Below are positions 1-20,248 of a DNA stretch of 64,000 nucleotides, piece by piece. The stretch lies in assembly GCF_963676685.1 (NCBI RefSeq), contig NC_092349.1, positions 55,738,001 through 55,802,000 of the forward strand. Direction: 5' to 3'. Every line of letters begins with the position of its first letter. Position 1 is the first letter of the stretch. The notes beneath the pieces are model-generated. The model did not search any database, had not been told where the DNA came from, and worked only from the letters and a program-made list of their open reading frames with translations. Origin of the DNA: Mytilus edulis. Its lineage: Eukaryota. Both the position numbers and the translations under genes were made by a program.

Positions 1-2765
1 ATGGAGCTATTATCTTATTTTTATTTTACAAAATTAAAGCGTTTTAATGTTTTCCTGTTTAATTTGTCTTTTAACACTAGTTAGTAACATTGACAACAAT
101 ATTTTGTGTCAAGATTTTTTTATGTTACATGCAAAGGTATTACTTCCTTAAAGTCAGACATTTATATAACATTTTATAACCTAAATGATTAATTAGATAT
201 TACTGGGCAGCAATTATATTATTTCTCCAAAGTTGACTATTAAGCACACCACTTTCATCTTCTGGTCTTCATGTATGTAACATTGACATACAACCTTTTA
301 CTTTTCTGTCAATGTTACACGCATGAACAGAACTGATAACATTTACTTACTCCTTTGCTCTATAAAGAGATTATTGATAATTTAACTTGTTTTACCACCA
401 TCAAACTTCATCTCTATTTCTAAATATAGATATTCTTTTTAGAAGTGTATTTTCTTCATTGACAACAAAATTGGTGTCAGTCTTGAAATTTTACATGCAA
501 TTTTTAATTAAAAAAATCTACAGGCAATATAAACCTAAGAAAGAAAAAGATGATCAGCAATAAATGTGATGAAGAAAACTCTCAGGAAGATGCTGCAAAA
601 AGATACTGTCCCTGTCAACCAGTCAGATGGTGATGTCCCTGGCAGCCAGACAGATGGTGATGTCCCTGTCAGCCTGGAAGATGGTGATGTCCCTGTCAGC
701 CTGGAAGATGGTGATGTACATATCAGTCAATCAGTTAGTTGGTGATGTTCCTGTCAGTCAGTCAGTCTGTGATGTTCTTGTAAGCCAGTCAGAGGGTAAT
801 GTCCTAGTCAGCCTGGCAGATGGTGATGTTCATATTAGTCTGTCAGTTGGTGATGTTCCTGTCATTCAGTCATATGGTGATGTTCCTGTCAGCCAGTCAG
901 ATGGTGATGTCCCTGTCAGCCAGTCAGATGGTGATGTCCCTGTCAGCCAGTCAGATGGTGATATCCCTTTCAGCCTGTCAGATGGTGATAACCCTATCAG
1001 CCTGGCAGATTATGATGTCTGTGATAGCCAGTCTGATAAGGTCCCTATTAGTGAGTCGGGTGGTGACGGTCCTTTCAGCCAGTCAGATAGTAGTTCTGTG
1101 TCAGAAAACCAGATGATGGTGACTGTCACATGTGTATGCAGACATACTAGTGATCTCCAATTTGACCATTCTACAGCAGTGTAGAAGATAGTTATTTCAA
1201 AATCTTGTTTATTCATCCCTTTTCATTCACCAGTCAACACATGTATCATGTGTATTTACTGATGCTCATTATAGAAATCATGAGGAATTCAATTTGTAAC
1301 ATTTTTTTTTAATTGTTATGCCAATAATTGACATTCCAGAATATCTTTTGCATTACAAGAGGTTCAGGCTCCTTCTGATTTCAAAATAATAATAATAAAC
1401 TCATCATGGATACCAGAATTGAAATTTTGTAGGCCAGAAATGCTTTTCGTTTACAAAAGACTATTCAGTGACGCTAATGAAACAAAAAAGTAAAAGAAGG
1501 CCAAATAAAGTTGAAAACAGGACTATGGTCTAATGGGTGTTGGTTTTCTCTTCTGAATTGTTTTACACTGGTCATTATTGGGCCCTTTAAATTGTGGCTT
1601 CCTGTAGTTTAGGTAACAAGTTTATAGAAGTTATGTAAACGATTGAACATAAGATTCTCAATAAATGCAGCTGTATAAACCTCTCGTAAATTTGTCCATA
1701 TTTTTTCTTGGTTTTTCATACTATTAGTTTTAAGTGTAGCTGTGTCACATGAATGAGGGATACATGTAATCATTTTGTACCCTTACTTTGTCAGTATTAG
1801 TTATTGAGTGAGAAACTTCGTGGATGCTGATGGTTGTGTGGTTGTCTTCTTATCAATCTCATCCCTGTGCATAAAAAAACGGATTGCTTACTTACTGATA
1901 TAAAAATGTTTCATGTTGTGGAAATTTTGGATGACTCCTTCATCAATTGATCTATCTTTGGTCATAATTTTATTTTTCTGGTTATTTTGACATTTGAATA
2001 TCTTTTAATTTAGCCTTCCATAGTGTACCACCATGAACAAGCATAACTACTGGTATAGTTAAAAAAATATGTCTGCTGTCTGAAATTTAGGTGAATGGTT
2101 TTGGTATTAACCACTATTTAAATAATATCATATATGAGAAATGTGGCAGTATAATTGTATAATTTACATTCAGATGGTTGTTTGGAGGCTTTTTATATCT
2201 TTTAAGGTCAATTCTGGCATGGTTCATTATTCATATTTTTTGTGTCCACGTTACATGCAACATTTAAGTCACTATTTTATGACAGAAATGAGATAATTGC
2301 AAAAATATTAATACAATTTTTTAATGTGAGGGTAACACAATGAAAAAGAGCCTTTACATGTTCAGTAAGAAAATGATTCTTACTGTATTTATCTCTTAAA
2401 CATTGCATGTAACATTGACAGAAAAGTAGAGGAAACTTGTTTTCACAAAATTTCTGAAAGAAATGAAAATATACATTTTAGAGTTTTGATGAAAGACAAT
2501 GTTTTGTGATCAATATATATGATGTTGAATGTTGAATAAGTTGAGGAATCATTAATCTCAATTTGGAAAAAGTGTCCATGTTACATGCTCCAAATTCATT
2601 ATTTGCTTTGGTTCCAAACTGACGTAAGTTTAAAAATGATTTTTTTGGGTACTAATAGAAGGACACCATTTGTAGCAATAATTTGTAAAAAATTTAGAAG
2701 CTTATAATGATTTTTATTTTTTTATTACAATGTCACACTAAAGTAGCATTAGCGAATTCCTGCCC
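1..2765. mobile_element. Degenerate DNA transposon remnant, right end only (possibly ISL2EU/PIF-Harbinger related)
   Basis: Recurrent subterminal motifs (gttacatgc; tacttttctgtcaatgttacacgc at ~299-322 inverted at ~2406-2429); sharp end ...gcgaattcctgccc at 2765 followed by an (AT)n run. The superfamily is a guess. Confidence 0.4.
605..1120. repeat. 27-bp minisatellite, consensus gatggtgatgtccctgtcagccagtca, roughly 18 degenerate copies
   Basis: Perfect adjacent units at ~900-960; explains ORFs 627..1184, 820..1116 and 1010..1216. Confidence 0.92.
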
Positions 2766-3254: not shown

Positions 3255-4498
3255 TTTTGGCTCACCTGCGTTCGTCGTCCGTCGTCGTCTGTCGTCCGTT
3301 GTCGTTAACTTTTACAAAAATCATCTCCTCTGAAACTACTGGGCCAAATGAAACCAAACTTGGCCACAATCATCATTGGGGTATCTAGTTTAAAGAATGT
3401 GTCCGGTGACCCGGCCAACCAACAAAGATGGCCGCCATGGCTAAAAATAGAACATAGGGGTAAAATGCAGATTTTGGCTTATAACTCAAAAACCAAAGCA
3501 TTGAGAGGAAATCTGACAAGGTAAAATTGTTTATCAGGTCAAGATCTATCTGTTTTGAAATTTTCAGATTAATCGGACAATCCGTTGTTGGGTTGCTGCC
3601 CCTGAATTTGTAATTGTAAGGAAATTTTGCTGTTTTTGGTTATTGTCTTGAATATTATTATAGATAGAGATAAACTGTAAACAGGAATAATGTTCAGCAA
3701 AGTAAGATTTACAAATAAATCAACATGACCGAAATGGTCAGTTGACCCCTTTAGGAGTTATTGCCCTTTATAGTCAATTTTTAACCATTTTCCGTAAATC
3801 TTAGTTATCTTTTACAAAAATCTTCTCCTCTGAAACTGCTGTGCCAAATTAATCCAAACTAATGGCCACAATCATCTTTGGGGTATCTAGTTTAAAAAAT
3901 GTGTCCAGTGACCCGACCATCAAATCAAGATGGCCGCCACAGCTAAAAATAGTACATAGGGGTAAAATGCAGTTTTTGGCTTATAACTCAAAAACCAAAG
4001 CATTTAGAGGAAATCTGACAGGGTTAAAATTGTCTATCAGGTCAAGATCTATCTGCCCTGAAATTTTCAGAAGAATCAGACAACCTGTTGTTGGGTTGCT
4101 GCCCCTGAATTGGTAATTTTAAGGAAATTTTGCTGTTTTTGGTTATATTTTTATTATCTTAAATATTATTATAGATAGAGATAAACTGTAAACAGCAATA
4201 ATGTTCAGCAAAGTAAGATTTACAAATAAATCAACATAACAGAAATGGTCGATTGACCCCCCTAAGGAGTTATTGTCCTTTATAGTCAAATTTTAACAAT
4301 TTTCATAAAATTTGTAAATTTTTATTAACATTTTCCACTGAAACTACTGGACCAAGTTCATTATAGATAGAGATAATTGTAAGCAACAAGACTGTTTAGT
4401 AAAGTAAGATGTACAAACACATCACCATCACCAAAACACAATTTTGTCATGAATCCATCTGCTTCCTTTGTTTAATATTCACATAGACCAAGATGAGC
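3255..4498 (+). mobile_element. HINE-like (Helentron-associated non-autonomous) element with ~500-bp internal tandem repeat
   Basis: T-run then ggctcacctg, (cgtc/gtc)n microsatellite, units starting ~3308, ~3807 and partial ~4330, inverted subterminal agatgagc at 4491-4498. Confidence 0.75.
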
Positions 4499-4967
4499 AT
4501 GACAATGCATGATAAGTAAAACATTATAATTACTTCTTTGTCTAACAAAATTTATCTGGCCTAGCTAATGGACCTAGATCTTGTGGTCAATCAGGGAGAC
4601 TACCGGTATATACTGTTTCGAATTTTAAGCAATCAGTTTTGACTTTATTCAAATCCAGGATATTATTATTTTATTGGCTTTCAATAGACTATTTTTATAT
4701 TACCGACTGTTGACTCTGGATTATTATTTTTCAACTGGTTAGCTTGGACATCATGGTAATGTACCAAGTCAGGTAACGAGCAAGCAAAAGAAGTATAACC
4801 AAGCTTTCAATCGGTACAATTTGGGGGAAAATTACCTGCTTGACTTTTTTTTTCACTAAAAAATCATTGGAAAACAGTAAACTTTCCCCATAAATTACAT
4901 TTATGACTTCTATAAAATATCCCAAAAAAGACATCATCTTCAAAAGAAATTGCATCTTTTTTTCCAG

Positions 4968-5144
4968 ACAGGACCAGTTATACCAATGCCTGTACCATCA
5001 AGTTATAATGATGTGACACAAGAGAAATCTTTACGAGACTTCACAGGATGGGTTTGGTATGACAAGGAGTTCTTTTTGCCTCTATCATGGAAAGGACAGA
5101 GGGTTGTGGTTAGAGTAGACAGTGCACGATATTATGCTAAAATG
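4968..5144 (+). CDS. GUSB: GUSB-like exon ([15 protein letters not shown]...YYAKM)
   Basis: ttccag acceptor, gtaggc donor, 177 nt, phase 0-0. Confidence 0.93.
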
Positions 5145-8100
5145 GTAGGCTTAAAAATATTTATATGCAATTCAGTTACATCTATATAGCTATATCATGT
5201 ATTCTACAATGTATAACTAAAACTGGATCTCATGTTTACAGCAATAAAATATGTTAAGGCCCAAACTATTAATACATGTGTTTCTTCTAACTCTACCTAC
5301 CCTAATCTTTAGTGCCTACCCTATATATTTAACACTTATTTTGCCCTTTTGAAACAAGCATTATTAAAGCAGAATGATTCCCTAATAAAGTAATTACCAG
5401 CTAAGGTATGTTTGTAAAATAAAATGATATTACCTAGCTACCCTATTTTTTTCAGCACTATGAAAAGGAAACTATATATATACTATAGGTCAAAGTAGGG
5501 CCCAAAATGAGTAGTGTAAAACAATTCAAACAGGAAAACCAAAGGTCAAATCTACATAGAAATGAGAAAACACTTAATATGAACCTCATTAACAAAGAAC
5601 TACCACTGAACAACAGGGTCCTGACTTAGGACAGGTGCAAACAAATGCAGCTGTTTTAAACGTGATAACAGGCGCCTACAGTCACCTGATCTGAAACAGT
5701 AATGCAATATTCATATATTACAACATTGAAAGATACACTAAAAAATAACAATTAAAATGTCTTAACTTAATCAAAAAGATATACATGATATATTAAAAAA
5801 AAACAATTAAAAACATGCACTGATATATTTTTGGTAATGTGTAACATGTGTAAGTCATTGTAAGTTTTGTAGATAAATAGCATGTAAAACCAACCTAAGT
5901 TTGCAGCCTAAATGAACTTGTTTGATGAATCAGCACTTTTTGTAACTACATATCAAGTTCATTGTACTCTTATCTGTGACAATGAAATCCATCAAGAAAA
6001 GTTTTTTACAAGATGTTTCCTTTTAATTGGAATGAGTCAGAAATTGTTGACAAATATAAGCGAAATCAATATTGAATCAAATTTCATTGTATAATATATT
6101 TATTGTAGTTATTGTACACTAGCTTTGAATGAAATTAAAACTTTAGAGGAAAAAAAAAATAAAATCATTTAGCTATACTTTTTTGTACTTTCAGTGGATA
6201 AATTCTGTGTTTTTAGTTGAACATGAGATGGGACATTTGCCTTTCGAGGCAGAGATACAAGATATTGCAAAGTTTGGATCAGTGAATTATTTAACAGTAG
6301 CTGTTGATAACACATTAACACCCACTACACTGCCACCCGGTGAAATAGTGTATAAACATGGCAAGTAAGTATTCCAATGGTTAATTATTAAATGAAAAAT
6401 GGCTACCCAAACCTTTTCTGTCTGAGATCCATGTTGAATAGGCATCTATATAATATAGGGTAAGTGTAAAGATACATGTACATGGACAATTTGCACTGGT
6501 ACTGCTGTTGAAACCAAGTACAATTTTTTGGTTATACCACTTTTTTCATTTCTATGGTAGAAAGTATACAAAATCATATATTCACTTTCTAAAGTAAAAG
6601 TAAATGCAGTATTTCTTTTTCACAGTAGCTATTGCTAACAATAGGAAGAGTTTCTTTGGGTGTCATTTAATCAGGTTTCAAATCTTCTTGATTCTTGAGT
6701 CTAAACATGCTGAAGGTCTGCATCACCTGATGTCTTCATTATATAAATTATTATTTGAGGTTTCATAGTCTTCCATGTTTGTACTGATTATGCTTTAAAA
6801 AATTGCTATCAGATGTAAAGCAAACAAAACCTCATTTCATCATGTCTACAACTTATCAAACTTGTAATATGATGTACAGAATAACATGTGAGTTGTCGCA
6901 TGGTAACTCTATCTGTTATTTTTATCATTACTGTGGCTAGTTTTTGTCGAGCCTGCAGTTTTTGTTGCAGAAAGCTCGACAAAGGGATAGTGATCTGGCT
7001 TTATATTTTAGAAGGTGGAAGACCTGGATGCTTCATACTATGTATATAGATGCCCCATGTTAAAAAGTTTCCGTCAGTCTAATGTCCAATGTCCTTGACC
7101 TTATTTTCATGGTTCAGTGACTACTTGAAAATAAAGTTAAGACTTTTTGTAAAGTTAAATTCTCTCTTATTATAAGTAATAGGATAACTATATTTTGTAT
7201 GTGCATAGCTTGCAAGGTCCTCATGCATATATATATGTCTGTCATACAGTTTTTACTTGACCTCAACCTCATCTCATGGATCAGTGAACAAGGTTAAGTT
7301 TTGGTAGTCAAGTCCATACCTTAGATACTATAGGCAATATGTATGGTATATTTAGTGTATAAAAGGACTGTAAGGTGAATATGTCCATCCGGCGGGTGTC
7401 ATCTGACCTTGGCTTCATTTTCATGGTTCAGTGGTTATAGTTAAGTTTTTGTGTTTTGGTCTGTTTTTCTTACACTGACTATGCAATAGGTCTACTATGT
7501 TTGATTGTAAGGTGTACATGTGTATCTGCCAGGTGTCATCTGACCTTGACCTCATTTTCATGGTTCAGTGGTCAAAGTTAAGTTTTTGAGTTTTGGTCTT
7601 TTTTCTAATACTATATGCAATAGTATAACTATATATTTGGTGTATGGAAATATTTTATGATCTATATTTCAGTCATGCATGTGACCTCATTTTCACAGTT
7701 CATTGTTCAGGTTCAGTCTTAAGTTTTTGTGTTTTATTCTGTTTTTCTTAAACTATAAGCAATAGGTCAACTATATTTGTTGTATGGAATGATTGTAATG
7801 TGTACATGTCTATCTTCCAGGTGTCATCTGACCTTGACCTCATTTTCATGGTTCATTGGTCAATGTTTATTTTTCTTGGTTAATGTTAAGTTTATGTGAC
7901 AGTTGTAATAAAGCTTTATATTTAGGACAATCAACATAATATCATTGATTAGTAAAGAAGGCGAGACATAACAATGTGTGCACTCAAGATTGTCTTAGTT
8001 AAAACATGGACATATATTATTATTCACATAAGGCGCAAGTGACCTAATTAAACCCCATATATATCGTATAAGGTCATTAGAACACTGTGCAACAAATTTA

Positions 8101-11100
8101 TCTTACCAACTATCTGAACATGTGGTATTCACTGAGACTAGTGATCCATCTTAAATATTCAGAACCTACTTCCATTTGTTTAAACAAAATCAAATGCCAA
8201 CAATAACAACTTGTTTAAGCTTAAATGTTATTTTATGAATTTTTTTCAATCGTTCATAATCAATTTCTTCCCCTGTTAAAAAACCTTTCAGATATTTCCT
8301 CAGCACAGTGTTGTTTTTACAAATAGATGTAACACCACTACCAAACGTGTATTGAAATAAACCATGCCTAGTTAAGCCCCTTATGAAATTTACATTGTCT
8401 CCACACGGTTGCTTTAATTTTGACCAATCATATTCCTAGAAATGTATAGGAGGTAATCATGGTAATATAAAATGTTATACAAGCACATATTAATTAATAT
8501 GATTTTAAGTCGAACAGATAATCTGCTCTGATTTCTATATATATATATTACTGTCTTTATAATTTTGTTTATTTTATTAAAAAAGGAATCGGCATGAATA
8601 TCACTTTTTTAACATTAGAATAACTATACGAAATGATTATGATTAATTTTATATTTTGTAGTTATCCTCCACATTTCTTCATTCAGAACTTAAACTTTGG
8701 ATTTTTTAACTATGCTGGTATAGACAGACAGGTTCGGCTGTATACAACACCACTTGTATATGTATCTGATGTTCGTGTTGTAACAGATTTCACTAATAAT
8801 GGAGGCAAGTTATTATTTACATTTTTTTAATGGGATATAACTCAACCCCTAAAAACAATTACCTCTTCCAATATAATAAAAAGAAGATTGTTTGAGTATT
8901 ACCCTGACTGTATGCAGATGACCTCTTGTACCAGATTTACCTCTTCATATTTTCCTGCTTTATTAAATAAACTTGTAAATAAATTTGCTACAAAACTGAT
9001 TATTTTATTTTCCCTCAGTTACATCATAGATGTATCTATGGTTATGGTGCTTCATACCTGAGGGGGGATAGGACCTTTATCGGGACTCCGGGATGGGGTG
9101 TTTTTAAGCTCGGGATTTCGGGATTGACACTTTCGGTATCCGGGAATTCTTTTTTCGAATTTCGGGACCTCAGGATTTCGTTTAATTTAAGCCCGGGATT
9201 TCAGGATTTCGTGTTTTTAAGCTCGGGATTTCGGGATCAGGACCTCTCTATCCTCCCTCATACCTGCCAACTTTTCAAAATATTTATGGGGATTTTAGGC
9301 CTAAGAAGACCTAATGCTCCTCTTACATAGCCATAAGAGTATTTATCTAATTCTGTGTACTATTGTTTGAATGAGCATACATGTATATGTGGTTAAAACA
9401 ATTTTATACTCATTTAAATGCTGTGTTTAGGAGTTTAAGTTTAGTGAGGTATTGAAAACCACAAAAACAAAATATATCGGTAACCATCTAAAACCACAAT
9501 TGAAACCATGCAAAAAGTTGTTATCTATCACCTTTTTTAATGTATCAAATTGAAATTGTTTTTTTTCCCCTAATGAATTTAGGTTCAAATACTGGTACTG
9601 TCTATTGGACAATAACAACAAACTCTGAAAAGGTCAAAGTTCAGGTGGAAGTTGTTGATGCTGATAGTAACACTGTTGCCATGGGAGAAGGTATCCAAGG
9701 TCAAGCTACTGTTTCAAATGTTAAGCTATGGTGGCCATATTCAATGGTTAAAACTGGAGCTGCCTATATGTATGTATTAAAGGTAAGTTTCTTACCAAAT
9801 GTATAGAGTTGTTTTCTTTGTGAACATTTACTTTCTCAATTAAGAAATAATTCATGGGGGCTTGAATTATACTGATTTTACCACGGGATGGCCCTTTATG
9901 CTAAATATTTTACCATGAGCGACAGCGACAAACATTTTACAAAAGGTTTCTTCTTATATTGTTGCTATTGGAACATGTTAAATATCAGATATATTTTTAT
10001 TCTCTGAAAAACTTGTAAGTTATGTGTCTTATTGAAGTAAGGACAAAGAAGTTTGTTCAAATTAGCTTTAATGAACGGTGATCCCATTTTTATACGACAG
10101 CAAAATTTTTTGCAGTTGTATATTGAACAGATATATCATGTTAAGGAGGGGTATTTGCGAAAAATACCAGTCGAGAGAATGTAAAATTTCACGAACCGTA
10201 AGGCGAGGGAAATTCATTCTCAAGACTGGTATTTTTCGCAAATACCCCTCAAGAACATGATATATCTGTTTAATTACACCGAATGTTAATATACTAAAAC
10301 GCATTGTTGACCGTGACGTTACAAGCGTCCAGTCGGATAGAGTATTTTTTGGCAAATACCACGGCAGAGAGGGTAAAAAAGGCATATCCTTTTAGCAAAT
10401 ACCCCGGCGGCGTTAAAAATGAACGATATTCATTTGATAACAGTAAATTGGTGAAAAATACACTGGCTATCAACCAATCAAAACCCCGGATTCTTACATA
10501 AGGTGTAATTAATATTGGTATCACGTCGTCGTCGTCAGCGTCGTCCGAAGACGGATGGTTTCCGGATAATAACTTTAGTATAAGAAAATTGATATCAATA
10601 AAATTTTAATACAATGTTTATAACTGCAAAAGGAAGCTTGGGATTGATTTTGGGGGTTATGGTCCCTATGGTTTAGGAATTAGGGGCCAAAAGGGGCCCA
10701 AAACAAGCATTTATCTTTTGTCAGGACAATAAGTTGTGTATAAGTATTTCAATTGTTCTGAAATTGTACCACAATGTTTAATACCATAAGTAGAAGGTTG
10801 GTATATATTTATGGGGTTAAGGGGCAAACAGTCTAGGAATAAAGGACCAAAAAGGGGCCAAAAACAAGCATTTTTGTAGTTTCAAGACAAAAAATTGGAT
10901 TTATCTTTCTTTGTCCAGAATGGTTATCGAATCACCTAAAACCAATGCTTTATGAAATTGTCTTTGAAAATTGGAGTTATCTTTCTTTTTCCAGAATAGT
11001 AGTTGAATCAACTTAAATCAATTCTATATACATATACAATGCAACATTCACTTTTACTACCAAATGATAAATTAAAGCAATCTTTACCATTCAGTGCTTA

Positions 11101-14100
11101 CATACATCATTATAGGATTATGCCCCTTTACAAGTGGAAAAATTGAAGATTTTTTTTGTTTCTGTTCTCTTAAGGTGGTATGGGTGTCTTCCGCCATCTT
11201 GGATTGTAAAAAACAGAGAATCTAAGGTCCACATTTTCTATCAAGTTAGCAAAATTTGATACAGGAATGCAGATATTTAATGTGCATTTTCATTTAAAAG
11301 AACCAATTTATAAGAATATAACTTATAGTTATTAACATTTTTACAAGTATTGATTATTTTTGGTTGTTTTTAAAGTTTTTGAATGGGCATTTTAAGGGGA
11401 GGTAATATATTCCCAAAGCATTGTCTGAAGCTATCTTTTCCTAATTTATTTTACAATTCTATCATTTTGTTTAGTGTCTAATCACCAAATGGTGTTTTTT
11501 CCTGTATAATCCATACAAATTGTGTCATTTGGTCACAACCTGTAGCTTGAGAAAATGCGCGGTGACCTATCATTTTTATGATATTTTTGAACATATATCA
11601 ATAGATACTATGTTTTGGCAAAGTATGAACAAATTCTATCATTTTTATTTTAGACTCCCATACCACCTTAACTTAAGTTTGTCTCAACTAAATTAAATGA
11701 AATGTGTATATAATGCTTAATTATTACCTCTAAACTAAGTTGTGTCCATACTTGCCTCCACCGTTCAGGGTTCGACCTCTACGGTCGTATAATGCTACGC
11801 CCTGCGGAGCATCTGGTTTTAATTTATTTTTCTATTAAATATATGATCAAGTTCATTTAAAAAAAGGGATTTATACCTTGAGCCCCCACAAAAACATACA
11901 GGTCTGTTACGTTATTAGTGATGTATTTGTGAAGTCATAACTGTTGATGACATTTTGTTCAAATCTGATTTGTGGCATAATTTATGACAATTTTGCTGGA
12001 AAATTAACAGTTGCAAGACACCTTGCCCAACAGACACATTTTCCTAAAAAAAAAAACTGGACATGAAATATTTTCATATATTTTTTTTAATTTAATTTTA
12101 AGAATTATACATACATGTACATTAAATTTACTCATATAGTTGGAGTTTGAAAATACATTTTACAGGACCATTTATTGGAGTTCCTGGCTCTTCTCCTTTA
12201 AGGACAAAAATGACAACTTTTCAATTGGTATTGGTAAATAACTTCATGTGTGAAAAAAGATAATACACACTGTAGTCATTAGTAGAAAGGTACATACATG
12301 ACATACAGTTTGTCAAATTTGAAATTACCCTGTGTTTAAGATAGCTTTGAATTTAACAATGACTTGCATAAATCAGACTTCGATGAAATATGCAATATAT
12401 TTTTGAATCTTAAGCTTATTCCTTTATACCTGGCCATGGTCATATAAGGTTTTTTCTATACGAAAATGTAGCTAATGCTTTAATAGATAACTATATAAAA
12501 TAGATTAAAAGAAACCCACCAAAATTAAATTTATATTAATGGATAATATATGCATGCATTTACTTTTAAGTTACAAGTTGTGACATGGACACTCATACCA
12601 AATATTCATATACAAAATGTACCTATTTATTAACAGGTTACAGTGAAAGACTCTACAAGTGCATCAACAGATATATATAGACAGCCATTTGGATTCAGGA
12701 CTGTTAACAAAACTAACACACAGTTACTGATTAACAACAAACCATTTTATTGTCATGGTGTGGCCAAACATGAGGATTATGATGTAAGTAAATACAGGGA
12801 AAATGTAAACAATGTGTAGTTGCCTTACTTACAATCATACTACATCTATTTACAATTATAAAAATATTTTTAGGTTAAGATTGCATGAAATGCAATCAAA
12901 ACCTTATAGGACCGACTTGATATCTAAATCTTCCAAGACTTTTACACTACCTTTTTTGATACACAAAATATAGTGCATTGGTCATAACATTCATATTATT
13001 CATATATATACATATAGTCTTCGTCAGGCATTTTGTCAGGGGTTGAATGAAAAAACAGAAACCAGTATTTACAAAACTATTGTGATATTTTATAAGAACA
13101 GATATATTAGCTTTCCATGTACTACCTTCACAGTTACTTTTTTAGTCATGCTAGTGCAGCATTCATAGTTAAAATCTAGTAGAATTAGAAAACCATTGAC
13201 AATGCCATTGATGTATGTGAATATCTATACAACCAAAAGGAACCTTCAAAGTATAGTCATTATCTTTTAAAGGTCAACATTGACTATGAAATTTAGAAAT
13301 TTGGTTACATGATAACTTCTACTTTTATTAAAGAACAATTTCATTAAGAGATATTTTAGATCATGACAGTACAGATGAATTTTCTACTGATCTTTATCAA
13401 AATGGATCAAACAAACAAAAAATGAATTCTAAGGATGAACCTTTTTGGTAGCATTAATAGGCCAAGACCTCATATTTTATAATGGCAGAAGAAGCTTCAG
13501 TTACTGTGGATTCATTTATATTTGTTGGATACCAATTTTCATGGATTTTGTGGGTACAGGTGAACCGCAAAATTAAATCATCAAGGAATGGCAAATTTTC
13601 TATAGTCTTGTGTGCTGACTTCACCAAAACCCCAAAATTAAGTATCCACGAACATGCAAGTTTTCTGTATTCCACTAAAATTGGTACCCACCAAAAATAA
13701 ATGAATCTACAGTATTGTGAGTATATAATATATATGGCCCAGTCCACATTAAAACACTACTCTTTATTCCAGCTTAGAGGTAAAGGTTTGGATATGGTCA
13801 GTGTAGCTAAAGATTTTAACATATTAAAATGGTTAGGTGTGAACTGTTTTAGAACATCCCACTACCCCTATGCAGAGGAAATAATGGACCAAGCTGATCA
13901 GCAAGGCGTTGTAGTAATTGATGAATCACCTGCTATAGGATTAATCTAGTAAGATGTTAGTGTATAAAAATAAGGAGATGTGGTATAATTGCAAATGCGA
14001 CAACTATACAAAAAAACTCAAATGATGTTGTAAGATTTAAATGGCCATATGTGGTTCATTAGTGTTTCTGGTTTTTCGTTTTTATATATATATTAGACCT

Positions 14101-17100
14101 TTGGTTTTCCCCGTTTGAATGGTTTTACACTAGTAAATTTTGGGGCCCTTTATAGCTTGCTATTCCGTGTGAGCCAAGGCTCCATGTTGAAGGTCGTACT
14201 TTGACCTATAATGGTTTACTTTATAAATTGTTACTTGGATGGAGAGTTGTCTCACTGGCACTCATACCACTTCTTCCTATATCTATATAACCAAGTTAAC
14301 GTATCTTTACACACACAAATCTTGTCAGATGTTACTTGTGCACTATAACTTTGCTTATTCAGATGATGAATTGCATTACACGCACGATAACATGTGGTTG
14401 ATATGAAGGACCCACATGGCACAAAAAGAGACCAGGCCCATTTGTTTTTTTAAATTTCTGTCAGAATGCTATTATAAACTGTCAGACAAATTTTGTAGGA
14501 GTTATTGCCCTTAAATGATAAGTAATAACTTTGAAAAAAAACGTTGCCTGATATTGCCGAGCTATTGAAATTTGTCTTAAGAAAGATAGAAATTTTGACT
14601 AGAATAAATGATCATCAAGAAAGTGGTAATGAACAAAATCTTAATTCTACTTATTATGGGAGTTCTTAATCTTTATAAATAATCTTTTATATTGTTTTGC
14701 CTTTTTTGCGGTTTATCTTGAAAACTTAAAAAAAAAAAATTAAATAGAAACTTTGAGAAAATGAAAATTATAGCTGAATTAAAGATCTGCAAGTATGTTA
14801 ACGTGGCTGAAATTGTCAGTGCACATTTAGTAATTATTCCCCTTTTAATGATAATTTTTACTGAAAAGTGGCTATTTTTGAAGCGGTGGGCTAGCCTCTA
14901 TATCTAGTTATAATTTAATTAGGGTGTAATAGCTTCATTCTGAAAATGAGTGCACCAGCAATGCTTTCACAACAAAAGAAAGCATTCAATTCATATTATA
15001 ATTACATTTTAATGCTACAGCGATGACATTAAGAATTATATGAAACTTTTTCTTTGCAATATTTTAACATTGTCACTTATCATGCTTATAATACTGGCAG
15101 TACACACAGTCAAATCTTGTGTATTGTATTCTGAACTACATTGATATTGAAGTGTTTTGGTTGTTGTTAGCAAATCAAAATGTTGGATTCTAATAAAGCA
15201 TAGTTGAAAGCCGTACATTGACTTATAATGGTTTACTCATTGGCACTTACACCACATCTTCCTATATCTATGTTATGTATCTTTTGTTATAGTGAAGGTA
15301 ATTATGGCAACAAGACCTTGACCTTACACCTTCAAGCCATGAGGGAGCTAGTATCCAGAGATAAGAACAGGCCTGCTGTTATAGCATGGTCTCTAGCTAA
15401 TGAACCTAATTCTAGATTAAGTATATCTGGTCCTTACTTCCAGTGAGTATAAAATAGTAAATGTGGATTAATTTATTTAAATGTATACCAATTTTGTGGA
15501 TTGAGGAAACATTTAGTTTTCTTTAATTTATATTTTTGGTTTTGTTATTTTTTTTAAAGTATGCATTAAAGCCTATAGAATAGTTTTTTTTTTATTCAAC
15601 ATTTAAATTTGTGGTTTCACTTTACCTATGCTATGAAATGCATAACGATTAATATTCTAAAATAATATAAATGCTCATTATTTATCATGTTTATCAAAGA
15701 TATGATCATATGCCTGTCTGAAGACAGGAAGCTTACTAGTTTCCTTTGAGAAATTTTAATTTAATTATTTATATAAATGTGATTGTCTTGGTTGAATCTA
15801 TTTACAACTATACTTTCTTCCTTGACTATTTAGATCTAGAGCTTCACATATTTTTTAGCTGCTGCCTATTTTTTGAGTCTTTAGATTTACATGTTTTTGG
15901 GTTGCTGTGTCGATAATTGGCATAATCATTTGTTTTTGTTCATATGACATGGTTTACAATCACAGCTTTTACCTATGCTCAGTATCATGATCTATCATTA
16001 AGGTGGTACCCAACACCTTAACTAAAATTAATTTGGTTGGCTTAATTTTCTTATAATTTTGACAAAGTATTTACTTTGACCCTTTGACAAAAAATTTGAC
16101 AAAGTATTTACTTTGACCCTTTGACAAAAATATAAAAAATTCTAAAAATTTGAACCAACCGTTTAATCAGAAAAATTACACTGGTTATATAGCAGTTTGA
16201 CAAACACTTATTTTGATCATTGAGGAGCTTAATATTCCCTTAACAACACAACATCATTAAAACGTTCTGCTGATTTTACAGAGTTATGTCCCTGTAGTGT
16301 TAGGTACCACCTTAAAGGTAAAGAAGCAATCTCTTTTAACTGAATTTAAATGCAATTGTATTGTAATTTCAGAAATTATTGCAAGGTTTTTAACTATTGA
16401 TTATTAACTCGACTTGATGAGAATTGCAATTGAATAACCTTCAGTTTGACAGTTTTAATTTGTTTGACAGAGTGGTTTGATCTGGCGTTAATGCATCAAA
16501 ATCATACATGCAGTTTCACAGAACTTTATTTTATTTCAATTTTATACATTTTTCCAATGGATTAGAAGCTCTACAGTTTTAGTTTGATTTCTATTTAAAT
16601 ACAGCACAGTGGTGGATCCAGGGGGGTTCCTTGGGTTGAAACCCCTCTGTTTTTTTGGATGATCAATGCATATTTGAATGGGGACGTATAGTTGGACAAC
16701 CCCTCCCCCTCCCCCTCCCCTACTTTGACTTAAAGTATCATCTTTAAATTATTGATTTTTTTAATTTCACCTTAGTACATCAAAATATATCAAGAAGTTA
16801 TTGGGCTGTTATTAACAAAGTGAAAGCAGCATGTCATTTTAAAATCATTTTTTAAATGTTTTAACAATTATGGAACTCTTGGTAATTACACCCTTTTACT
16901 TCTTAGACAGGTATATAATTTGACAAAGGCTCTGGATCCATCTAGACTGGTAACCTTTGCTTCAAGTAACAGTAACCCATTAACTGATCATGCAGTTAGT
17001 ATATTTTAATTATATACATATTTATGCAAATTAAATTGAAAATACATTTTTATCTTCCACTATTCAGTGGCTGAGTCACATATTGTAACTGTTGTCTACT

Positions 17101-20084
17101 CTACTAAAAACCAACAGTTGTCTGTATGGTTTTTGTCCTCTTTATAGATATGGATCTAGATCTGTTTTGGTTTATGAGTGTTAAATGATGATTTACTGAT
17201 CATTTTGGTATTTCGTTTCCAATAATATACTTTTGGAAGGTCTAAGGTCATTGGGAGACAGCTAAATACCAAAAGTGTAAATATATTTTTAACCAATAGA
17301 AGAAAATATGCATATTTTGAAAACTTTTCTTGATGCATTTTGCATTTATCTTTTCAGTAATCTTTATAAGTACATGTACAAAGATTATACATGGTTTAGT
17401 AATTATATTTATAATATTCAGATGAGTTTCAAGATATCACTGACAAAAGTAATCAATAGCAAAAATATAAGAAAGAGACGTGTACAAGGCTATCTTCAGT
17501 TATAATTAAGTTATCATGAAACATACAGATATTGAAAAGATTGAAAATCCCTTAAGAATTGATTCAAACGCTTGTGCATAAAAAAAAGAACATTTCAGAT
17601 AAAATGATTGAAAAACACAGACACATTCAGTAGAAATTCAAGTTTAGATTTACATTTTGTTGGTAGGGAATCACAGCTCACAACAGTTTATTTTTCTTTT
17701 ATAGATGAACATAGTTGATATTATTATGGTAAACATCTATTTTGGTTGGTACCAAGACACTGGTTACCTACAGACAATTCCATACCAGGTACCACCAACT
17801 TTGGGAGGTCTATTTAAGCACTACAATAAACCTGTAATGGTCTCAGAATATGGAGCAGAAACTCTAACAGGATTACACACAGTAGGTTTTTCTTCTTCTT
17901 GTTTAATTTAAAAAAAAAGTAGCATGTTTTTTGTTTATAGCAGTTTTGTTCTGATACAAATGGTGTATGCTGTGTCAGTATGTTTCATTGATATAAGAAG
18001 ATGTGGTATAGGTGTCAATGAGAAAACTCTCCCCTCCAAGTCACCATTTGTAAAAGTTATCCATTATAGGTCAAAGTACAGTCTTCAACACGGAGCCTTA
18101 GCTCACATCAAAAACAGAGCTATATATATAAAGAGCCACAAAAATGACATGGTGTAAAACCATTCAACAAGAAAATCAAGTGTCTAAAAAACAACAACAC
18201 AAGACACACTTATGAACCACATCAACAAACAACAACCACTGAACATCAGCTCACTACCCGTTTTAATTTCCCATTTACATAACTTTAAGCCAATAATCTT
18301 ACTTCTGTACTGCTGAAGGTTTGCTCCTCTGTTTCAAAATAGCAAACTTTTTAAAAGAACTATTACAAATTGATAGTGTAAATACAAAGGAACTTAAAAA
18401 GTGATAAAAAATGATACGACTGTGTTCTTGTTTTTGAGATATAATCAATTGAAATTTCAGTGGGAAATGATTCTCTCTTGATTGTTTTTACATCTAACAT
18501 TGGCACCTTTTTCTCTTCAAAAACTATGAAAAAATAACAATAATTTAAAAAAATGGCTTTTACAAAATATGCAATAAAATTATATAAAGAATAGGAGTAA
18601 GCAGACAAAATTTTTGTTGAAACTACATGGATAAAACTAGAGGAATATGAATATCTTTGAAAAAGTCTAAATCAAGAGTAGCGAACATCCTTAATTATCA
18701 TTTTTGTCTATTAACATGCTTAGGGCTGTTAATTAATTCATAATTGTGTTGTTTTGCAAAGTATGTTGACCATAGAGGGGCATAAGATACCAGAGGGACA
18801 GACAAATTCATAGATTGAAAATAAACTGACAACGCCATATAGCTAAATATGAACAATAAATAGACAAACAGACTAAAAATAGTACACACGACTTGTAAAT
18901 GGTGAGATAGGCCAAGGGAGATACAATTTGTAGCAATTATATATATAAAGTTAATATTTTTATTTGTCCATAGAGTCCATCATTTACATTCTCAGAAGAA
19001 TATCAGAAAGACTTACTCATTCAGTATCATCAAGTATATGATACCTTAAGAAAAGAGTATTTAGCTGGAGAAATGATCTGGAACTTTGCTGATTTCCTCA
19101 TTGATCAAAGTAAGTATTAAGTTTAATTTGTCCATGACCAGTACATGTTGAGTATGACAAATTGTGGAAATATTGGTCTATTGTCTGAATTCAAAGTTGA
19201 ATACTGACCATGCAAGACCCTCATGGGTAGTCATGGTGGTTACGCTCCCCAATTGTAGTAGTCAATTCAAATCAAGGTATTATGAACTTAACATACATAA
19301 GAAATACCAGACCTGTTAGATTAAATATTAGAAAAAGGAAATATTGACTAAGCAGCAGAGAGATGCTTTAAGATTCTTTTTTTTATAAATATGTTTTTAA
19401 TCAAGATATTCTTACAATTCATATAAATTAACAGGGTCTAGAGCATGAACGCAGTTGACCAGGTCTCCAATTTAATTTGAATTATAAATTTGTCATTTGG
19501 TTAGAACTATAAAAAAATTTAAATAGAAGGGTTGAACCAAATGCAGTTAAGTTCAAGTCACATAATTTCACAAAATATATTCTCTATATATATTCCCTCA
19601 TCCTGCTGTTGATTCGATACATTTCTAATTTTCTGATTTACCAGTAGTTACTTGACTGAGAAGATCAGGAGTCGGTTTGAAAAAAAATTACGACTATGAT
19701 TGATTGTAAGTATAATGAATTGTTCATTGCTAACTATCAGTCTTAGTTGTAAGTTTTTTTGGGAAACAGACTCTAGAGCTGGAGAAACATACGTACTTCT
19801 TTGAAGCTCATTATTGCTACACATGAATTAAGATTATTATTTGCAAGACAACGTCTCACCACATTTTTGTGTTCTAACCAAACAATTTCCTTGCACTATT
19901 ATTGATCTTTAGTCCATGTCATGTTCTAATGTATTGACACACTTTTGTTATTACAGAAACTAATTGGGCATATGGTTGTAACAAAGGACTATTTACAAGA
20001 CACAGACAACCTAAAATGGCCGCCTTTACTGTTAGAGAGAGATATATGAAAATGATTAATGAAACTCAGAAGTACCAGAACTAA
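4968..20084 (+). CDS. GUSB: Beta-glucuronidase (GUSB)-like glycoside hydrolase family 2 gene, 5'-partial; join(4968-5144,6195-6364,8662-8804,9583-9782,12637-12783,13773-13948,15293-15442,16907-16994,17705-17881,18974-19109,19957-20084)
   Basis: 11 exons with AG acceptors and GT (one GC) donors join in frame (1692 nt, 563 aa + TAA). GH2/GUSB motifs: [42 protein letters not shown] (acid/base Glu), SEYGAE (nucleophile Glu), [17 protein letters not shown]. Exon layout parallels vertebrate GUSB exons 2-12. May be a paralog rather than the strict ortholog. Confidence 0.95.
6195..6364 (+). CDS. GUSB: GUSB-like exon ([18 protein letters not shown]...[12 protein letters not shown])
   Basis: tttcag acceptor, gtaagt donor, 170 nt, phase 0-2. 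Confidence 0.93.
6941..7985 (+). mobile_element. HINE-like element with internal tandem repeats
   Basis: 5' T-run + hairpin gtcgagcctgca...tgcagaaagctcgac; repeated tcatctgaccttgacctcattttcatggttca units; end ggcgagaca...gtgtgcactc. Confidence 0.7.
8662..8804 (+). CDS. GUSB: GUSB-like exon ([22 protein letters not shown]...TNNG), GC donor
   Basis: ttgtag acceptor, AG|GCAAGT donor, 143 nt, phase 2-1. Confidence 0.9.
9061..9258. mobile_element. 198-bp GC-rich MITE with target-site duplication CATACCTG
   Basis: TIR aggggggatag / ctatcctccct, internal cgggatttcgggat repeats, direct repeat catacctg at 9053-9060 and 9259-9266. Confidence 0.8.
9583..9782 (+). CDS. GUSB: GUSB-like exon (SNTGTVYW...KLWWPY...YVLK)
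   Basis: tttag acceptor, gtaagt donor, 200 nt, phase 1-0. Confidence 0.9.
10120..10512. mobile_element. Palindrome-terminated non-autonomous element
   Basis: ~145-bp imperfect palindrome 10126-10270; ttaattacacc (10270-10280) recurs inverted at 10502-10512. Confidence 0.7.
10523..11820 (+). mobile_element. HINE-like element, 5' end disrupted, carrying a nested TTAA element
   Basis: (cgt)n microsatellite start, internal repeats (tttaggaattaggggccaaaa...), GC-rich terminal stem-loop followed by a T-run. Confidence 0.65.
11174..11667. mobile_element. Kolobok-like non-autonomous DNA transposon (TTAA TSD)
   Basis: ttaa|ggtggtatgggtgtct ... agactcccataccacc|ttaa. Confidence 0.85.
12637..12783 (+). 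CDS. GUSB: GUSB-like exon (VTVKD...PFGFRTV...[17 protein letters not shown]); not in ORF track
   Basis: taacag acceptor, gtaagt donor, 147 nt, phase 0-0. Confidence 0.93.
13504..13712. mobile_element. TA-flanked Tc1/mariner-type MITE
   Basis: ta|ctgtggattcattta ... taaatgaatctacag|ta; degenerate relative at ~15457-15670. Confidence 0.8.
13773..13948 (+). CDS. GUSB: GUSB-like exon (LRGKGLD...[11 protein letters not shown]...[10 protein letters not shown])
   Basis: ttccag acceptor, gtaaga donor, 176 nt, phase 0-2. Confidence 0.94.
15293..15442 (+). CDS. GUSB: GUSB-like exon with acid/base Glu ([17 protein letters not shown])
   Basis: ttatag acceptor, gtgagt donor, 150 nt, phase 2-2. Confidence 0.94.
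16002..16311. mobile_element. Kolobok-like MITE (TTAA TSD), family shared with 43963-44227
   Basis: ttaa|ggtggtacccaacac ... gtgttaggtaccacc|ttaa; internal ~37-bp tandem duplication at ~16057-16130. Confidence 0.85.
16907..16994 (+). CDS. GUSB: GUSB-like exon ([20 protein letters not shown]...DHA); not in ORF track
   Basis: tcttag acceptor, gttagt donor, 88 nt, phase 2-0. Confidence 0.9.
17705..17881 (+). CDS. GUSB: GUSB-like exon with nucleophile Glu (NIYFGWY...[12 protein letters not shown])
   Basis: ttatag acceptor, gtaggt donor, 177 nt, phase 0-0. Confidence 0.94.
18974..19109 (+). CDS. GUSB: GUSB-like exon ([11 protein letters not shown]...[14 protein letters not shown]); not in ORF track
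   Basis: ccatag acceptor, gtaagt donor, 136 nt, phase 0-1. Confidence 0.94.
19665..19775. mobile_element. ~110-bp palindromic MITE, family shared with 45038-45147
   Basis: gagtcggttt...aaaaattacgacta / tagttgtaagtttttt...aaacagactc. Confidence 0.65.
19957..20084 (+). CDS. GUSB: GUSB-like last coding exon ([30 protein letters not shown]...QN*); not in ORF track
   Basis: ttacag acceptor, TAA at 20082-20084. Confidence 0.94.
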
Positions 20085-20248
20085 TAAAGGGATAAATATT
20101 TGACAATCATATACTAGTATATATATAGATATATGTGAACCAGAACAAAATACTACACTTAAATAAAAATCAAGATATGAATGATTTATTATATATACAT
20201 ATTTTTTGTAGGATTTCTTTGTTTCATACATTTCAATTTTACAATAAA
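20083..20248 (+). promoter_or_regulatory. Candidate polyadenylation signals of the GUSB-like gene
   Basis: AATAAA at 20083-20088 (overlapping the stop), 20162-20167 and 20243-20248; common by chance in AT-rich DNA. Confidence 0.35.

What the first reader, a model, noticed from the sequence alone, without database searches (positions are those of the whole stretch)
8699..19988. Intact GUSB-like GH2 enzyme with the uronic-acid-binding residues replaced: candidate new substrate specificity
Seen: the spliced ORF is uninterrupted and keeps SHYP, ANEP (acid/base), SEYG (nucleophile), WY and WNFADF. Three residues differ in ungapped alignment. F-G-FFNYAG (GGA 8699-8701) replaces F/H-D-FFNYAG, and [13 protein letters not shown] (TGG 19965-67, TGT 19977-79) replaces human EQSPT-R-VLG-N-K-KG. 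Established: in E. coli GUS, D163, Y472, R562, N566 and K568 form the glucuronate-recognition site, and the NxK motif is used to tell GUS from other GH2 enzymes. Inference: three concerted substitutions in an otherwise conserved, stop-free gene suggest a neofunctionalised paralog acting on another sugar (neutral, sulfated or algal glycans in a filter feeder), which automatic annotation would simply call GUSB. SARY for SAHx and GIDR for GI/LH/QR point the same way.
Basis: partly seen in the sequence, partly recalled or inferred. Interest (0 to 1): 0.8.

Follow-up and report, generated by a model that had tools for sequence, protein, structure and literature searches.

The report
Divergent mussel beta-glucuronidase paralog, altered sugar pocket
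A mussel genome carries, besides its normal beta-glucuronidase gene, a second intact and transcribed copy that keeps the catalytic machinery but has replaced three of the residues that hold glucuronic acid, so it probably cuts a different or modified sugar; this still needs an enzyme assay.

Summary
The window holds exons 2-12 of a 12-exon GUSB-family (GH2) gene. Exon 1, with the start codon and a signal-like peptide, lies 2.1-2.3 kb upstream of the window.

Exon-by-exon alignment to human GUSB and E. coli GUS shows H330, N412, E413, Y468, Y472, E504, W549 and K568 kept. D163 is Gly, R562 is Trp and N566 is Cys. D and N are invariant in 119 of 119 animal GUSBs.

The genome has exactly one other GUSB locus, 31 Mb away on the same chromosome, with canonical D, R and N-R-K. 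It is the ortholog of Mytilus coruscus 'uidA'.

RNA contigs from three runs, one of them a gut metatranscriptome, show four predicted introns removed and the W and C codons unchanged. All 8 listed exon variants are synonymous. A related species' fragment keeps NWAYGCNKG.

The gene is therefore a maintained, expressed paralog and not a decaying copy. Published E. coli GUS N566S data (27-fold higher KM) make weakened glucuronide binding likely. A new specificity is plausible but untested. A Daphnia GUSB-like protein shows a parallel Asp-to-Ala plus Asn-to-Cys pair. 'GIDR' is not special.

Full-length orthologs could not be retrieved. The joined spliced protein was neither searched nor folded.

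The parts
4968..5144 (+). Exon 2 (59 codons, phase 0/0; GH2 N-terminal sugar-binding domain, contains SARY). Exon 1 (Met, signal-like peptide, LYPRESETRE...) lies outside the window at L020:7707-7946 = window -2293 to -2054.
   Evidence: AG|ACA acceptor and ATG|GTAGGC donor. Pfam PF02837 E=2.6e-4. Exon 1 found by tblastn with the paralog's exon 1, E=1.7e-16, donor AAG|GTAAAT in phase 0.
6195..6364 (+). Exon 3 (ends in phase 2)
   Evidence: TTTCAG|TGG acceptor, GGCAA|GTAAGT donor. Aligns to M. coruscus GUSB residues 124-176.
8662..8804 (+). Exon 4, [11 protein letters not shown]. Requires a GC donor (GGAG|GCAAGT) to keep the frame.
   Evidence: Aligns to human GUSB chain 174-222, E=1.4e-11. The splice phase was worked out. 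This junction was not covered by RNA.
8699..8701 (+). GGA = Gly at the position of E. coli GUS D163 / human D207 (ligand of the sugar 4-OH)
   Evidence: Asp in 119/119 animal GUSBs. The role of D163 is from PMC10535898.
9583..9782 (+). Exon 5 (GH2 immunoglobulin-like domain)
   Evidence: Pfam PF00703 E=9e-4. AG|G acceptor, AAG|GTAAGT donor.
12637..12783 (+). Exon 6 (start of the TIM barrel, [11 protein letters not shown])
   Evidence: PF02836 21.3 bits.
13773..13948 (+). Exon 7 ([10 protein letters not shown]; His = E. coli H330)
   Evidence: PF02836 69.5 bits. PDB alignment.
15293..15442 (+). Exon 8 (WSLANEP; Asn/Glu = N412/E413, the acid/base)
   Evidence: The donor is joined to 16907 in RNA contigs of X1, X5 and X14.
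16907..16994 (+). Exon 9
   Evidence: Joints 15442>16907 and 16994>17705, both GT..AG. This settles the choice between two in-frame splice options.
17705..17881 (+). Exon 10 (YFGWY = Y468/Y472; VSEYGAE, Glu = E504 nucleophile)
   Evidence: Joints 16994>17705 and 17881>18974.
18974..19109 (+). Exon 11 (WNFADF, Trp = W549)
   Evidence: Joints 17881>18974 and 19109>19957.
19957..20084 (+). Exon 12 coding part with TAA stop ([20 protein letters not shown]...)
   Evidence: The X5 contig covers 19957-20100 with a single synonymous difference.
19965..19967 (+). TGG = Trp at the position of E. coli R562 / human R600 (loop-8 Arg that helps bind the carboxylate)
   Evidence: Unchanged in the transcripts of X1, X5 and X14. 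Kept in P0001.
19977..19985 (+). TGT AAT AAA = Cys-Asn-Lys in place of Asn-x-Lys (E. coli N566-K567-K568). The Asn is lost and the Lys is kept.
   Evidence: Asn in 119/119 and Lys in 119/119 animal GUSBs. Unchanged in transcripts. Kept in P0001.

Best explanation
This is a functional second member of the animal beta-glucuronidase (GUSB, GH2) family in a mytilid mussel, separate from the canonical GUSB gene 31 Mb away on the same chromosome. It encodes a 643-aa protein with a signal-like N-terminus. The protein keeps the full retaining-glycosidase apparatus: the acid/base Glu in ANEP, the nucleophile Glu in SEYG, and His330, Asn412, Tyr468, Tyr472, Trp549 and Lys568 (E. coli numbering). It has replaced the Asp that binds the sugar 4-OH (to Gly) and two of the four side chains that bind the C6 carboxylate (Arg562 to Trp, Asn566 to Cys). 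Shown here: the gene is intact, a canonical copy exists, the gene is transcribed and spliced, the substitutions are present in transcripts, and variation within and between close species is purely synonymous. Inferred: it still works as an exo-beta-glycosidase of the secretory/lysosomal or digestive route, but with strongly weakened binding of plain glucuronides and a shifted or relaxed glycone preference. Candidate substrates are a neutral hexoside, or a uronic acid or hexose modified or epimerised at O4. The sugar itself is unknown.
For: All 12 exons are open, with consensus splice sites and a CDS of 1929 nt. Exon-wise Pfam hits cover GH2 N, middle and TIM-barrel domains. Alignments to 1BHG/3HN3 and 3K46 fix every active-site residue. 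There are only two GUSB loci in the genome; the other has SAHY, FDFFNYAGIHR and TRVVGNRKG, and is 81-98% identical per exon to Mytilus coruscus 'uidA'. Four GT..AG joints are present in contigs of three runs, including an RNA gut metatranscriptome whose contigs match the exons with no mismatch. The W and C codons are unchanged in two organism labels. All 8 listed exon variants are synonymous, P about 2e-6. P0001, an ORF fragment from another source, is 33/36 identical and keeps NWAYGCNKG. 135 of 144 columns that are >=97% conserved are kept, and the changes are enriched in sugar contacts (p=0.02). Literature: NxK plus the loop-8 Arg and loop-6 Tyr hold the carboxylate (PMC12243196). D163 and W549 hold the 4-OH (PMC10535898). 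E. coli N566S has KM 0.26 to 7 mM, kcat/KM down 23-fold, and galactosidase and fucosidase activity up (PMC3118342). Parallel case: Daphnia pulex E9GYV0 has Ala at D163 and Cys at N566 with the catalytic residues intact.
Against: There are no enzyme data. Lys568 (whose loss, not that of Asn566, abolishes E. coli GUS activity per PMC3118342) and Tyr472 are kept, and an Asn sits next to the Cys, so glucuronidase activity may persist. The exon 4/5 junction rests on a GC donor that RNA did not cover here. Most RNA runs are only guessed to be RNA, and raw-read support is 1-2 reads per joint. No 3D model of this protein was made, because the joined sequence was not submitted.
Confidence: 0.6

Rival explanations
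1. It is still a beta-glucuronidase. The duplicate was subfunctionalised (other tissue, pH, aglycone or polymer context), and Lys568, Tyr472 and perhaps the neighbouring Asn567 suffice to hold the carboxylate.
For: Lys and Tyr are kept, and an Asn is adjacent to the Cys. K568Q, not N566S, abolishes E. coli GUS activity, and N566S keeps its kcat (PMC3118342). Some GH2 hexuronidases work without NxK (PMC12243196).
Against: Three ligands are lost at once, including the invariant Asp (119/119) and Asn (119/119). N566S alone costs 23-fold in kcat/KM (PMC3118342). A side chain at position 567 points away from residues 566 and 568 in an extended loop; this is an inference and no model was made.
Confidence: 0.25
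2. It is a catalytically dead or near-dead pseudoenzyme, for example a carbohydrate-binding or chaperone-like protein, maintained for a non-hydrolytic role.
For: The Asp that is conserved at the -1 subsite is lost. The gene sits on a long branch.
Against: Both catalytic Glu and their positioning residues (Asn412, Tyr468, His330, Trp549) are retained. Pseudoenzymes usually lose these first; this is general knowledge.
Confidence: 0.08
3. It is a decaying duplicate (young pseudogene) or an assembly or sequencing artefact.
For: Evolution is accelerated relative to the canonical copy: 52% against 60% identity to a coral GUSB. 8-9 otherwise invariant columns are changed.
Against: There is no stop or frameshift in 12 exons. 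Only about 55% identity to the paralog yet still intact, so the duplication is old. Spliced transcripts occur in several studies. 8/8 variants are synonymous. W and C are confirmed in transcripts of two organism labels and in P0001. Asp to Gly (GAY to GGA) and Asn to Cys (AAY to TGT) each need two base changes.
Confidence: 0.04

Closest known systems
Canonical animal lysosomal beta-glucuronidase (human GUSB, PDB 1BHG/3HN3; same-genome paralog at G000:C6:87288811-87305360; Mytilus coruscus 'uidA', P0196)
   Same: Same 12-exon layout, with exon borders matching the paralog. Same three GH2 domains, signal-like N-terminus, catalytic Glu pair, and H330, N412, Y468, Y472, W549 and K568. About 50-57% identity to animal GUSBs.
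   Different: Gly for the invariant Asp (D163/D207), Trp for Arg (R562/R600), Cys for the Asn of NxK (N566/N604). A branch about twice as long. 8-9 changes at otherwise >=97%-conserved columns.
Laboratory-evolved E. coli GUS variants N566S and T509A/S557P/N566S/K568Q (Matsumura and Ellington, as re-examined in PMC3118342)
   Same: The NxK Asn is replaced by a small polar residue (Ser there, Cys here) in an otherwise intact GUS active site. In E. coli this weakens glucuronide binding and opens activity on galactosides, fucosides and glucosides.
   Different: The natural protein keeps Lys568 and additionally loses Arg562 and Asp163, which those variants kept. No kinetic data exist for it.
Crustacean GUSB-like proteins with G-C-M-K-G: Daphnia pulex E9GYV0/EFX75346.1 (P0055) and Armadillidium nasatum KAB7493947.1 (P0085)
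   Same: Cys at the NxK Asn with the Lys kept. Daphnia also has a small residue (Ala) at D163 and intact catalytic motifs.
   Different: They keep the loop-8 Arg. P0055 groups with arthropod GUSBs and not with the mussel gene in the NJ tree, so the similarity looks convergent. P0085 is a partial 303-aa model.
GH2 beta-galacturonidases and GUS-like beta-galactosidases (GH2_3, GH2_11 and others in PMC12243196)
   Same: GH2 group I enzymes in which small changes around loop 8 and the -1 subsite switch the glycone between GlcA, GalA and Gal.
   Different: They are bacterial. None was shown here to carry the G/W/C combination, and no sequence-level comparison of their loop 8 was possible with the tools' output.

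Membership tests
Glycoside hydrolase family 2 (CAZy GH2) | Domain order Glyco_hydro_2_N, Glyco_hydro_2 (Ig-like), Glyco_hydro_2_C (TIM barrel) | tested here: met
   Exon-wise hmmscan: PF02837 on exon 2, PF00703 on exon 5, PF02836 on exons 6, 7, 8, 10, 11 and 12 in profile order. Six-frame PF02836 hits in the genome. Single exons other than 6, 7, 8, 10 and 11 fall below Pfam's whole-protein cut-off, as expected for pieces.
Glycoside hydrolase family 2 (CAZy GH2) | Retaining mechanism pair: acid/base Glu after Asn (N-E-P) and nucleophile Glu (E-Y-G) | tested here: met
   E in ANEP aligns to human chain 431 (E451) and E. coli E413. E in SEYG aligns to human chain 520 (E540) and E. coli E504.
Beta-glucuronidase (GUS/GUSB, EC 3.2.1.31) as defined by active-site signature | N-x-K motif in loop 8 (E. 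coli N566, K568) contacting the C6 carboxylate | tested here: not met
   C-N-K in place of N-K-K: the Asn is replaced by Cys and the Lys is kept. Asn is 119/119 in animal GUSBs.
Beta-glucuronidase (GUS/GUSB, EC 3.2.1.31) as defined by active-site signature | Upstream loop-8 Arg (E. coli R562) assisting carboxylate binding | tested here: not met
   Trp at this position. Arg is present in 127 of the 129 long GUSBs whose alignment covers these sites.
Beta-glucuronidase (GUS/GUSB, EC 3.2.1.31) as defined by active-site signature | Loop-6 Tyr (E. coli Y472) and Y468 | tested here: met
   Y-F-G-W-Y aligns to E. coli 468-472.
Beta-glucuronidase (GUS/GUSB, EC 3.2.1.31) as defined by active-site signature | Asp (E. 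coli D163) binding the sugar 4-OH | tested here: not met
   Gly.
Beta-glucuronidase (GUS/GUSB, EC 3.2.1.31) as defined by active-site signature | Hydrolysis of beta-D-glucuronides | not testable with these tools
   Needs recombinant protein and pNP/4-MU substrates.
Animal GUSB gene family (by descent) | Best similarity to and grouping with animal GUSBs; shared exon structure with the canonical copy | tested here: met
   Best PDB hit for most exons is human GUSB. 50-57% identity to animal GUSBs. Groups with molluscs plus a nemertean in 84% of NJ bootstraps, but sister to the Mytilus canonical copy in only 8%. Exon borders parallel the paralog.

The most novel reading that the evidence does not exclude
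Invertebrates harbour an unrecognised functional class of GUSB-derived GH2 glycosidases. It is marked by a small residue at the 4-OH-binding Asp plus Cys at the NxK Asn, and arose independently in mussels (G/W/C-N-K) and branchiopod or isopod crustaceans (A/R/C-M-K). The class would act on a non-glucuronide glycone, or on an O4-substituted or epimerised sugar of dietary (algal) or endogenous glycans. Removing the Asp side chain might even open the pocket beyond O4, allowing non-terminal (endo-like) attack.
Probability: 0.3. Interest if true: 0.7.

Novelty: new variant of a known kind. Interest (0 to 1): 0.5.

Why it matters
Automatic annotation will call this gene beta-glucuronidase, and histochemical 'beta-glucuronidase' is a standard lysosomal marker in mussel ecotoxicology. 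If the paralog has another specificity, it would be a natural counterpart of the classic laboratory evolution of E. coli GUS towards other glycosides. It would also be a rare documented case of glycone switching inside the animal GUSB lineage, and a new enzyme for marine glycan breakdown. The parallel Asp/Asn replacements in Daphnia make the hypothesis testable in two phyla. If it is only a weaker glucuronidase, the finding is an ordinary subfunctionalised duplicate.

Tried and rejected
(1) A word search with exon 12 gave one fragment only, P0001. With exon 4 it gave nothing. With the coral GUSB P0010 as a full-length proxy it listed only canonical GUSBs; the 120 best of 7535 did not reach down to window-like proteins.

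(2) The representative search with exon 7 returned mostly exon-sized ORF fragments. No representative was clearly closer to the window gene than to the canonical copy. At 50% clustering the paralog is probably merged with canonical GUSBs.

(3) A metagenome scan with P0001 fetched only an unrelated, intron-poor canonical GUSB locus, L021, with GNKKG.

Placement used per-exon rows and summed distances (NJ), which leaves the age of the duplication unresolved.

(6) dN/dS between the two paralogs was rejected as uninformative, because synonymous sites are saturated at about 55% protein identity.

(8) Y469F is not meaningful, since Phe is the commonest residue there.

(9) A processed-pseudogene origin of the spliced contigs was rejected: the genome has only the two intron-containing loci.

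(10) The search of earlier findings held nothing on glucuronidase.

Full report
WHAT IS THERE

The window (G000:C6:55738001-55802000, + strand; genome 1.37 Gb, about 31% G+C) carries exons 2-12 of a GUSB-family gene on the + strand. From open frames, AG/GT sites and phase bookkeeping, the exons are 4968-5144, 6195-6364, 8662-8804, 9583-9782, 12637-12783, 13773-13948, 15293-15442, 16907-16994, 17705-17881, 18974-19109 and 19957-20081, followed by TAA.

Exon 1 is not in the window. tblastn with the paralog's first exon found it 2.1-2.3 kb upstream, at L020:7707-7946 (E=1.7e-16). It has an ATG, a hydrophobic signal-like stretch, the LYPRESETRE...NGLWNFRAD motif and a phase-0 GTAAAT donor.

The twelve exons sum to 1929 nt, or 643 codons. 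One junction (exon 4/5) only stays in frame with a GC donor (GGAG|GCAAGT). That is a common minor donor type, but it is inferred here.

The joined protein was not sent to any search or folding tool.

CHECK OF THE OBSERVATION

Exon-wise phmmer against solved structures gives ungapped alignments to human GUSB (1BHG/3HN3; chain numbering +20 = precursor numbering) and E. coli GUS (3K46; chain numbering -2).
- The Gly of F-G-FFNYAG (GGA 8699-8701) lies opposite human D207 / E. coli D163.
- N-W-A-Y-G-C-N-K-G lies opposite T-R-V-L-G-N-K-K-G. So Trp (TGG 19965-67) = R600/R562, Cys (TGT 19977-79) = N604/N566, and the Lys (K606/K568) is kept.
- The other -1 subsite and catalytic residues are all in place: H330 in SHYP, N412/E413 in ANEP, Y468/Y472 in YFGWY and E504 in SEYG, and W549 in WNFADF.
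- Pfam sees the three GH2 domains in order.

In an alignment of 119 full-length animal GUSBs, Asp, Asn and Lys are 119/119. Of the 129 long GUSB sequences whose alignment covers all these sites, 127 read D-R-N-x-K.

Of 144 columns that are at least 97% conserved, the window gene changes 9. Three of those 9 are among the 11 sugar-contact residues (Fisher p=0.02).

'GIDR' occurs in canonical GUSBs, and the His of 'SAHY' is only 92% conserved.

PARALOG, NOT ALLELE OR ARTEFACT

Six-frame searches of the whole assembly, with Pfam PF02836 and with exons 4, 7 and 11, find exactly two GUSB loci, both on contig C6.

The second locus, at 87288811-87305360, has the same exon layout and the canonical residues SAHY, FDFFNYAGIHR and TRVVGNRKG. 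It is 81-98% identical per exon to 'uidA' of Mytilus coruscus (P0196). The window gene is only 45-75% identical per exon to P0196. So the organism is a mytilid mussel, and the window gene is the divergent copy.

RELATIONSHIP AND AGE

On this analysis the gene is 54.8% identical to the M. coruscus canonical copy. It is equally or slightly more similar to Solemya, a chiton and Haliotis (about 56-57%). Its branch is about twice as long as those of the canonical copies.

Over 200 bootstraps it falls with molluscs plus a nemertean in 84%, but is sister to the Mytilus canonical copy in only 8%. The duplication is therefore old and of lophotrochozoan origin. Its exact age is unresolved, and long-branch effects are possible.

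EXPRESSION AND SELECTION

The 31-mer index finds the stretch in DNA-like runs of three organism labels. It also finds about a dozen probable RNA runs that hold 12-17% of the words, and the exons make up 14% of the stretch.

Four runs were laid on window 15200-20100. The GT..AG joints 15442>16907, 16994>17705, 17881>18974 and 19109>19957 appear in contigs of X1 (organism A, depth 169), X5 (organism B, depth 19) and X14. X14 is a declared RNA library, an invertebrate gut metatranscriptome (depth 14-27), and its contigs match the exons without mismatch. In the raw RNA reads of X21 (6% sampled) the joints have 1-2 reads each.

The joint 16994>17705 decides between two in-frame splice options. No difference is reported at the Trp or Cys codons, and the X5 contig spans 19957-20100 with one silent change.

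All eight listed exon differences are synonymous. Only 19.6% of random changes would be, so P is about 2e-6.

Since the genome has no intron-less copy, the joined forms are RNA. The gene is thus transcribed, correctly spliced and under purifying selection. The decaying-duplicate reading is refuted.

The heavy read depth inside introns 8 and 10 comes from dispersed repeats, not from this gene.

RELATIVES WITH THE SAME CHANGES

The word search with exon 12 found one protein, P0001. It is a 69-aa ORF fragment from JGI/ENA metagenome contigs, 33/36 identical in the exon part. Its flanks and C-terminal tail differ, and it keeps N-W-A-Y-G-C-N-K-G. So the Trp and Cys are conserved in at least one further, more distant source.

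Exon 4 found nothing. The 1.84-billion-protein representative search with exon 7 returned canonical GUSBs and exon-sized fragments. Using the coral GUSB P0010 as a proxy listed only canonical proteins. Conservation of the Gly outside this assembly therefore remains unknown.

Among all long sequences fetched, three had non-canonical residues at these sites.
- Daphnia pulex E9GYV0 has Ala at D163 and G-C-M-K-G, with the catalytic motifs intact.
- Armadillidium nasatum KAB7493947.1 has G-C-M-K-G, with the Asp retained; it is a partial model.
- A crinoid protein has Leu for the Arg.

The Daphnia protein groups with arthropods, so the pairing of a small residue at D163 with Cys at N566 seems to have arisen twice.

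HOW IT MOST LIKELY WORKS

Established from the literature:
- In GH2 hexuronidases the C6 carboxylate is held by the Asn and Lys of NxK, an upstream loop-8 Arg and a loop-6 Tyr. The motif separates them from GH2 galactosidases (PMC12243196, PMC6351562).
- D163 and W549 hold the 4-OH (PMC10535898).
- In E. coli GUS, N566S raises KM for pNP-glucuronide from 0.26 to 7 mM, lowers kcat/KM 23-fold, and raises galactosidase and fucosidase activity. K568Q abolishes glucuronidase activity. The quadruple mutant containing both gains more than 100-fold galactosidase activity (PMC3118342).

Inference: the mussel protein keeps every residue needed for double-displacement hydrolysis of a beta-pyranoside, but it lacks two of the four carboxylate ligands and the 4-OH ligand. 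It should bind plain glucuronides poorly. Its glycone preference is probably relaxed or shifted, particularly in what it tolerates at C4 and C6. The signal-like N-terminus and its presence in a gut metatranscriptome fit a lysosomal or digestive enzyme.

Because Lys568 and Tyr472 remain, a weakened but real glucuronidase is the main rival. A pseudoenzyme is less likely, since the catalytic residues are conserved.

NOVELTY AND VERDICT

By descent the gene belongs to the animal GUSB family and to GH2. By active-site signature it fails three of the defining GUS features, so it should not be filed as a beta-glucuronidase without an assay.

I found no paper describing such a paralog in molluscs. It is a new variant of a known kind. 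It is interesting mainly as a natural analogue of the laboratory GUS-to-galactosidase evolution, with a possible convergent counterpart in crustaceans.

Interest 0.5.

Noticed in passing
L017:5682-7331 (G000:C6:87301682-87303331), intron after exon 10 of the canonical GUSB paralog: A 53-bp minisatellite of 31 copies (89% matches). Its unit is a copy of the 3' end of exon 10 with its donor (...IIVTEYGADTVAGLHQ|GT). It therefore repeats the nucleophile motif and a splice donor about 31 times just downstream of the real exon, which could supply cryptic donors. A second array, 29 bp x 14, follows at L017:7502-7910.
   Followed up: partly
L016:8098-9190 (G000:C6:~87294098-87295190), around exon 6 of the canonical paralog: The 3' end of exon 6 ([19 protein letters not shown]) is repeated several times in tandem, in frame and in the following intron.
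   Followed up: no
window 607-1037 (open frame 573-1181): A 27-bp tandem repeat of about 16 copies (80% matches). It reads as an open (S)DGDVPVSQ-type peptide repeat of about 200 codons. It lies inside intron 1 of the GUSB-like gene.
   Followed up: no
window 15200-15270, 15998-16316, 17990-18250, 18644-18971: Intronic segments with very high RNA and contig depth at 90-95% identity, many loose ends, and 'opposite strands' joints between 15236 and 18052-18061. They look like copies, partly inverted, of abundant transcribed dispersed repeats and are not part of the gene's mRNA.
   Followed up: no
window 3309-3521 and 3853-4113 (+ frames), also complementary-strand frames nearby: Two similar open frames (…ATIIxGVSSLKNVSxDP…RWPPxLKIxHRGKMQxLAYNSKTKAxRGNLT…), about 540 bp apart in intron 1. 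Probably two copies of a repeat or transposon remnant.
   Followed up: no
L019:1602-1907, 4395-4655 (G000:C6:~55719600-55722660), upstream of exon 1: Open frames resembling ornithine/diaminopimelate-type decarboxylase exons (…IIAEPGQFYVSSAF…, …IIWGPTCDAVDLI…GAYAF…). This is probably the upstream neighbour gene on the + strand.
   Followed up: no
L021 (JAAUXU010117909.1:14380-34278), 8236-10174: A metagenome-collection contig (47% G+C) with an almost intron-free canonical GUSB gene (FDFFNYAG, VVGNKKG). It appears to be eukaryotic DNA from some other invertebrate filed among metagenome records.
   Followed up: no
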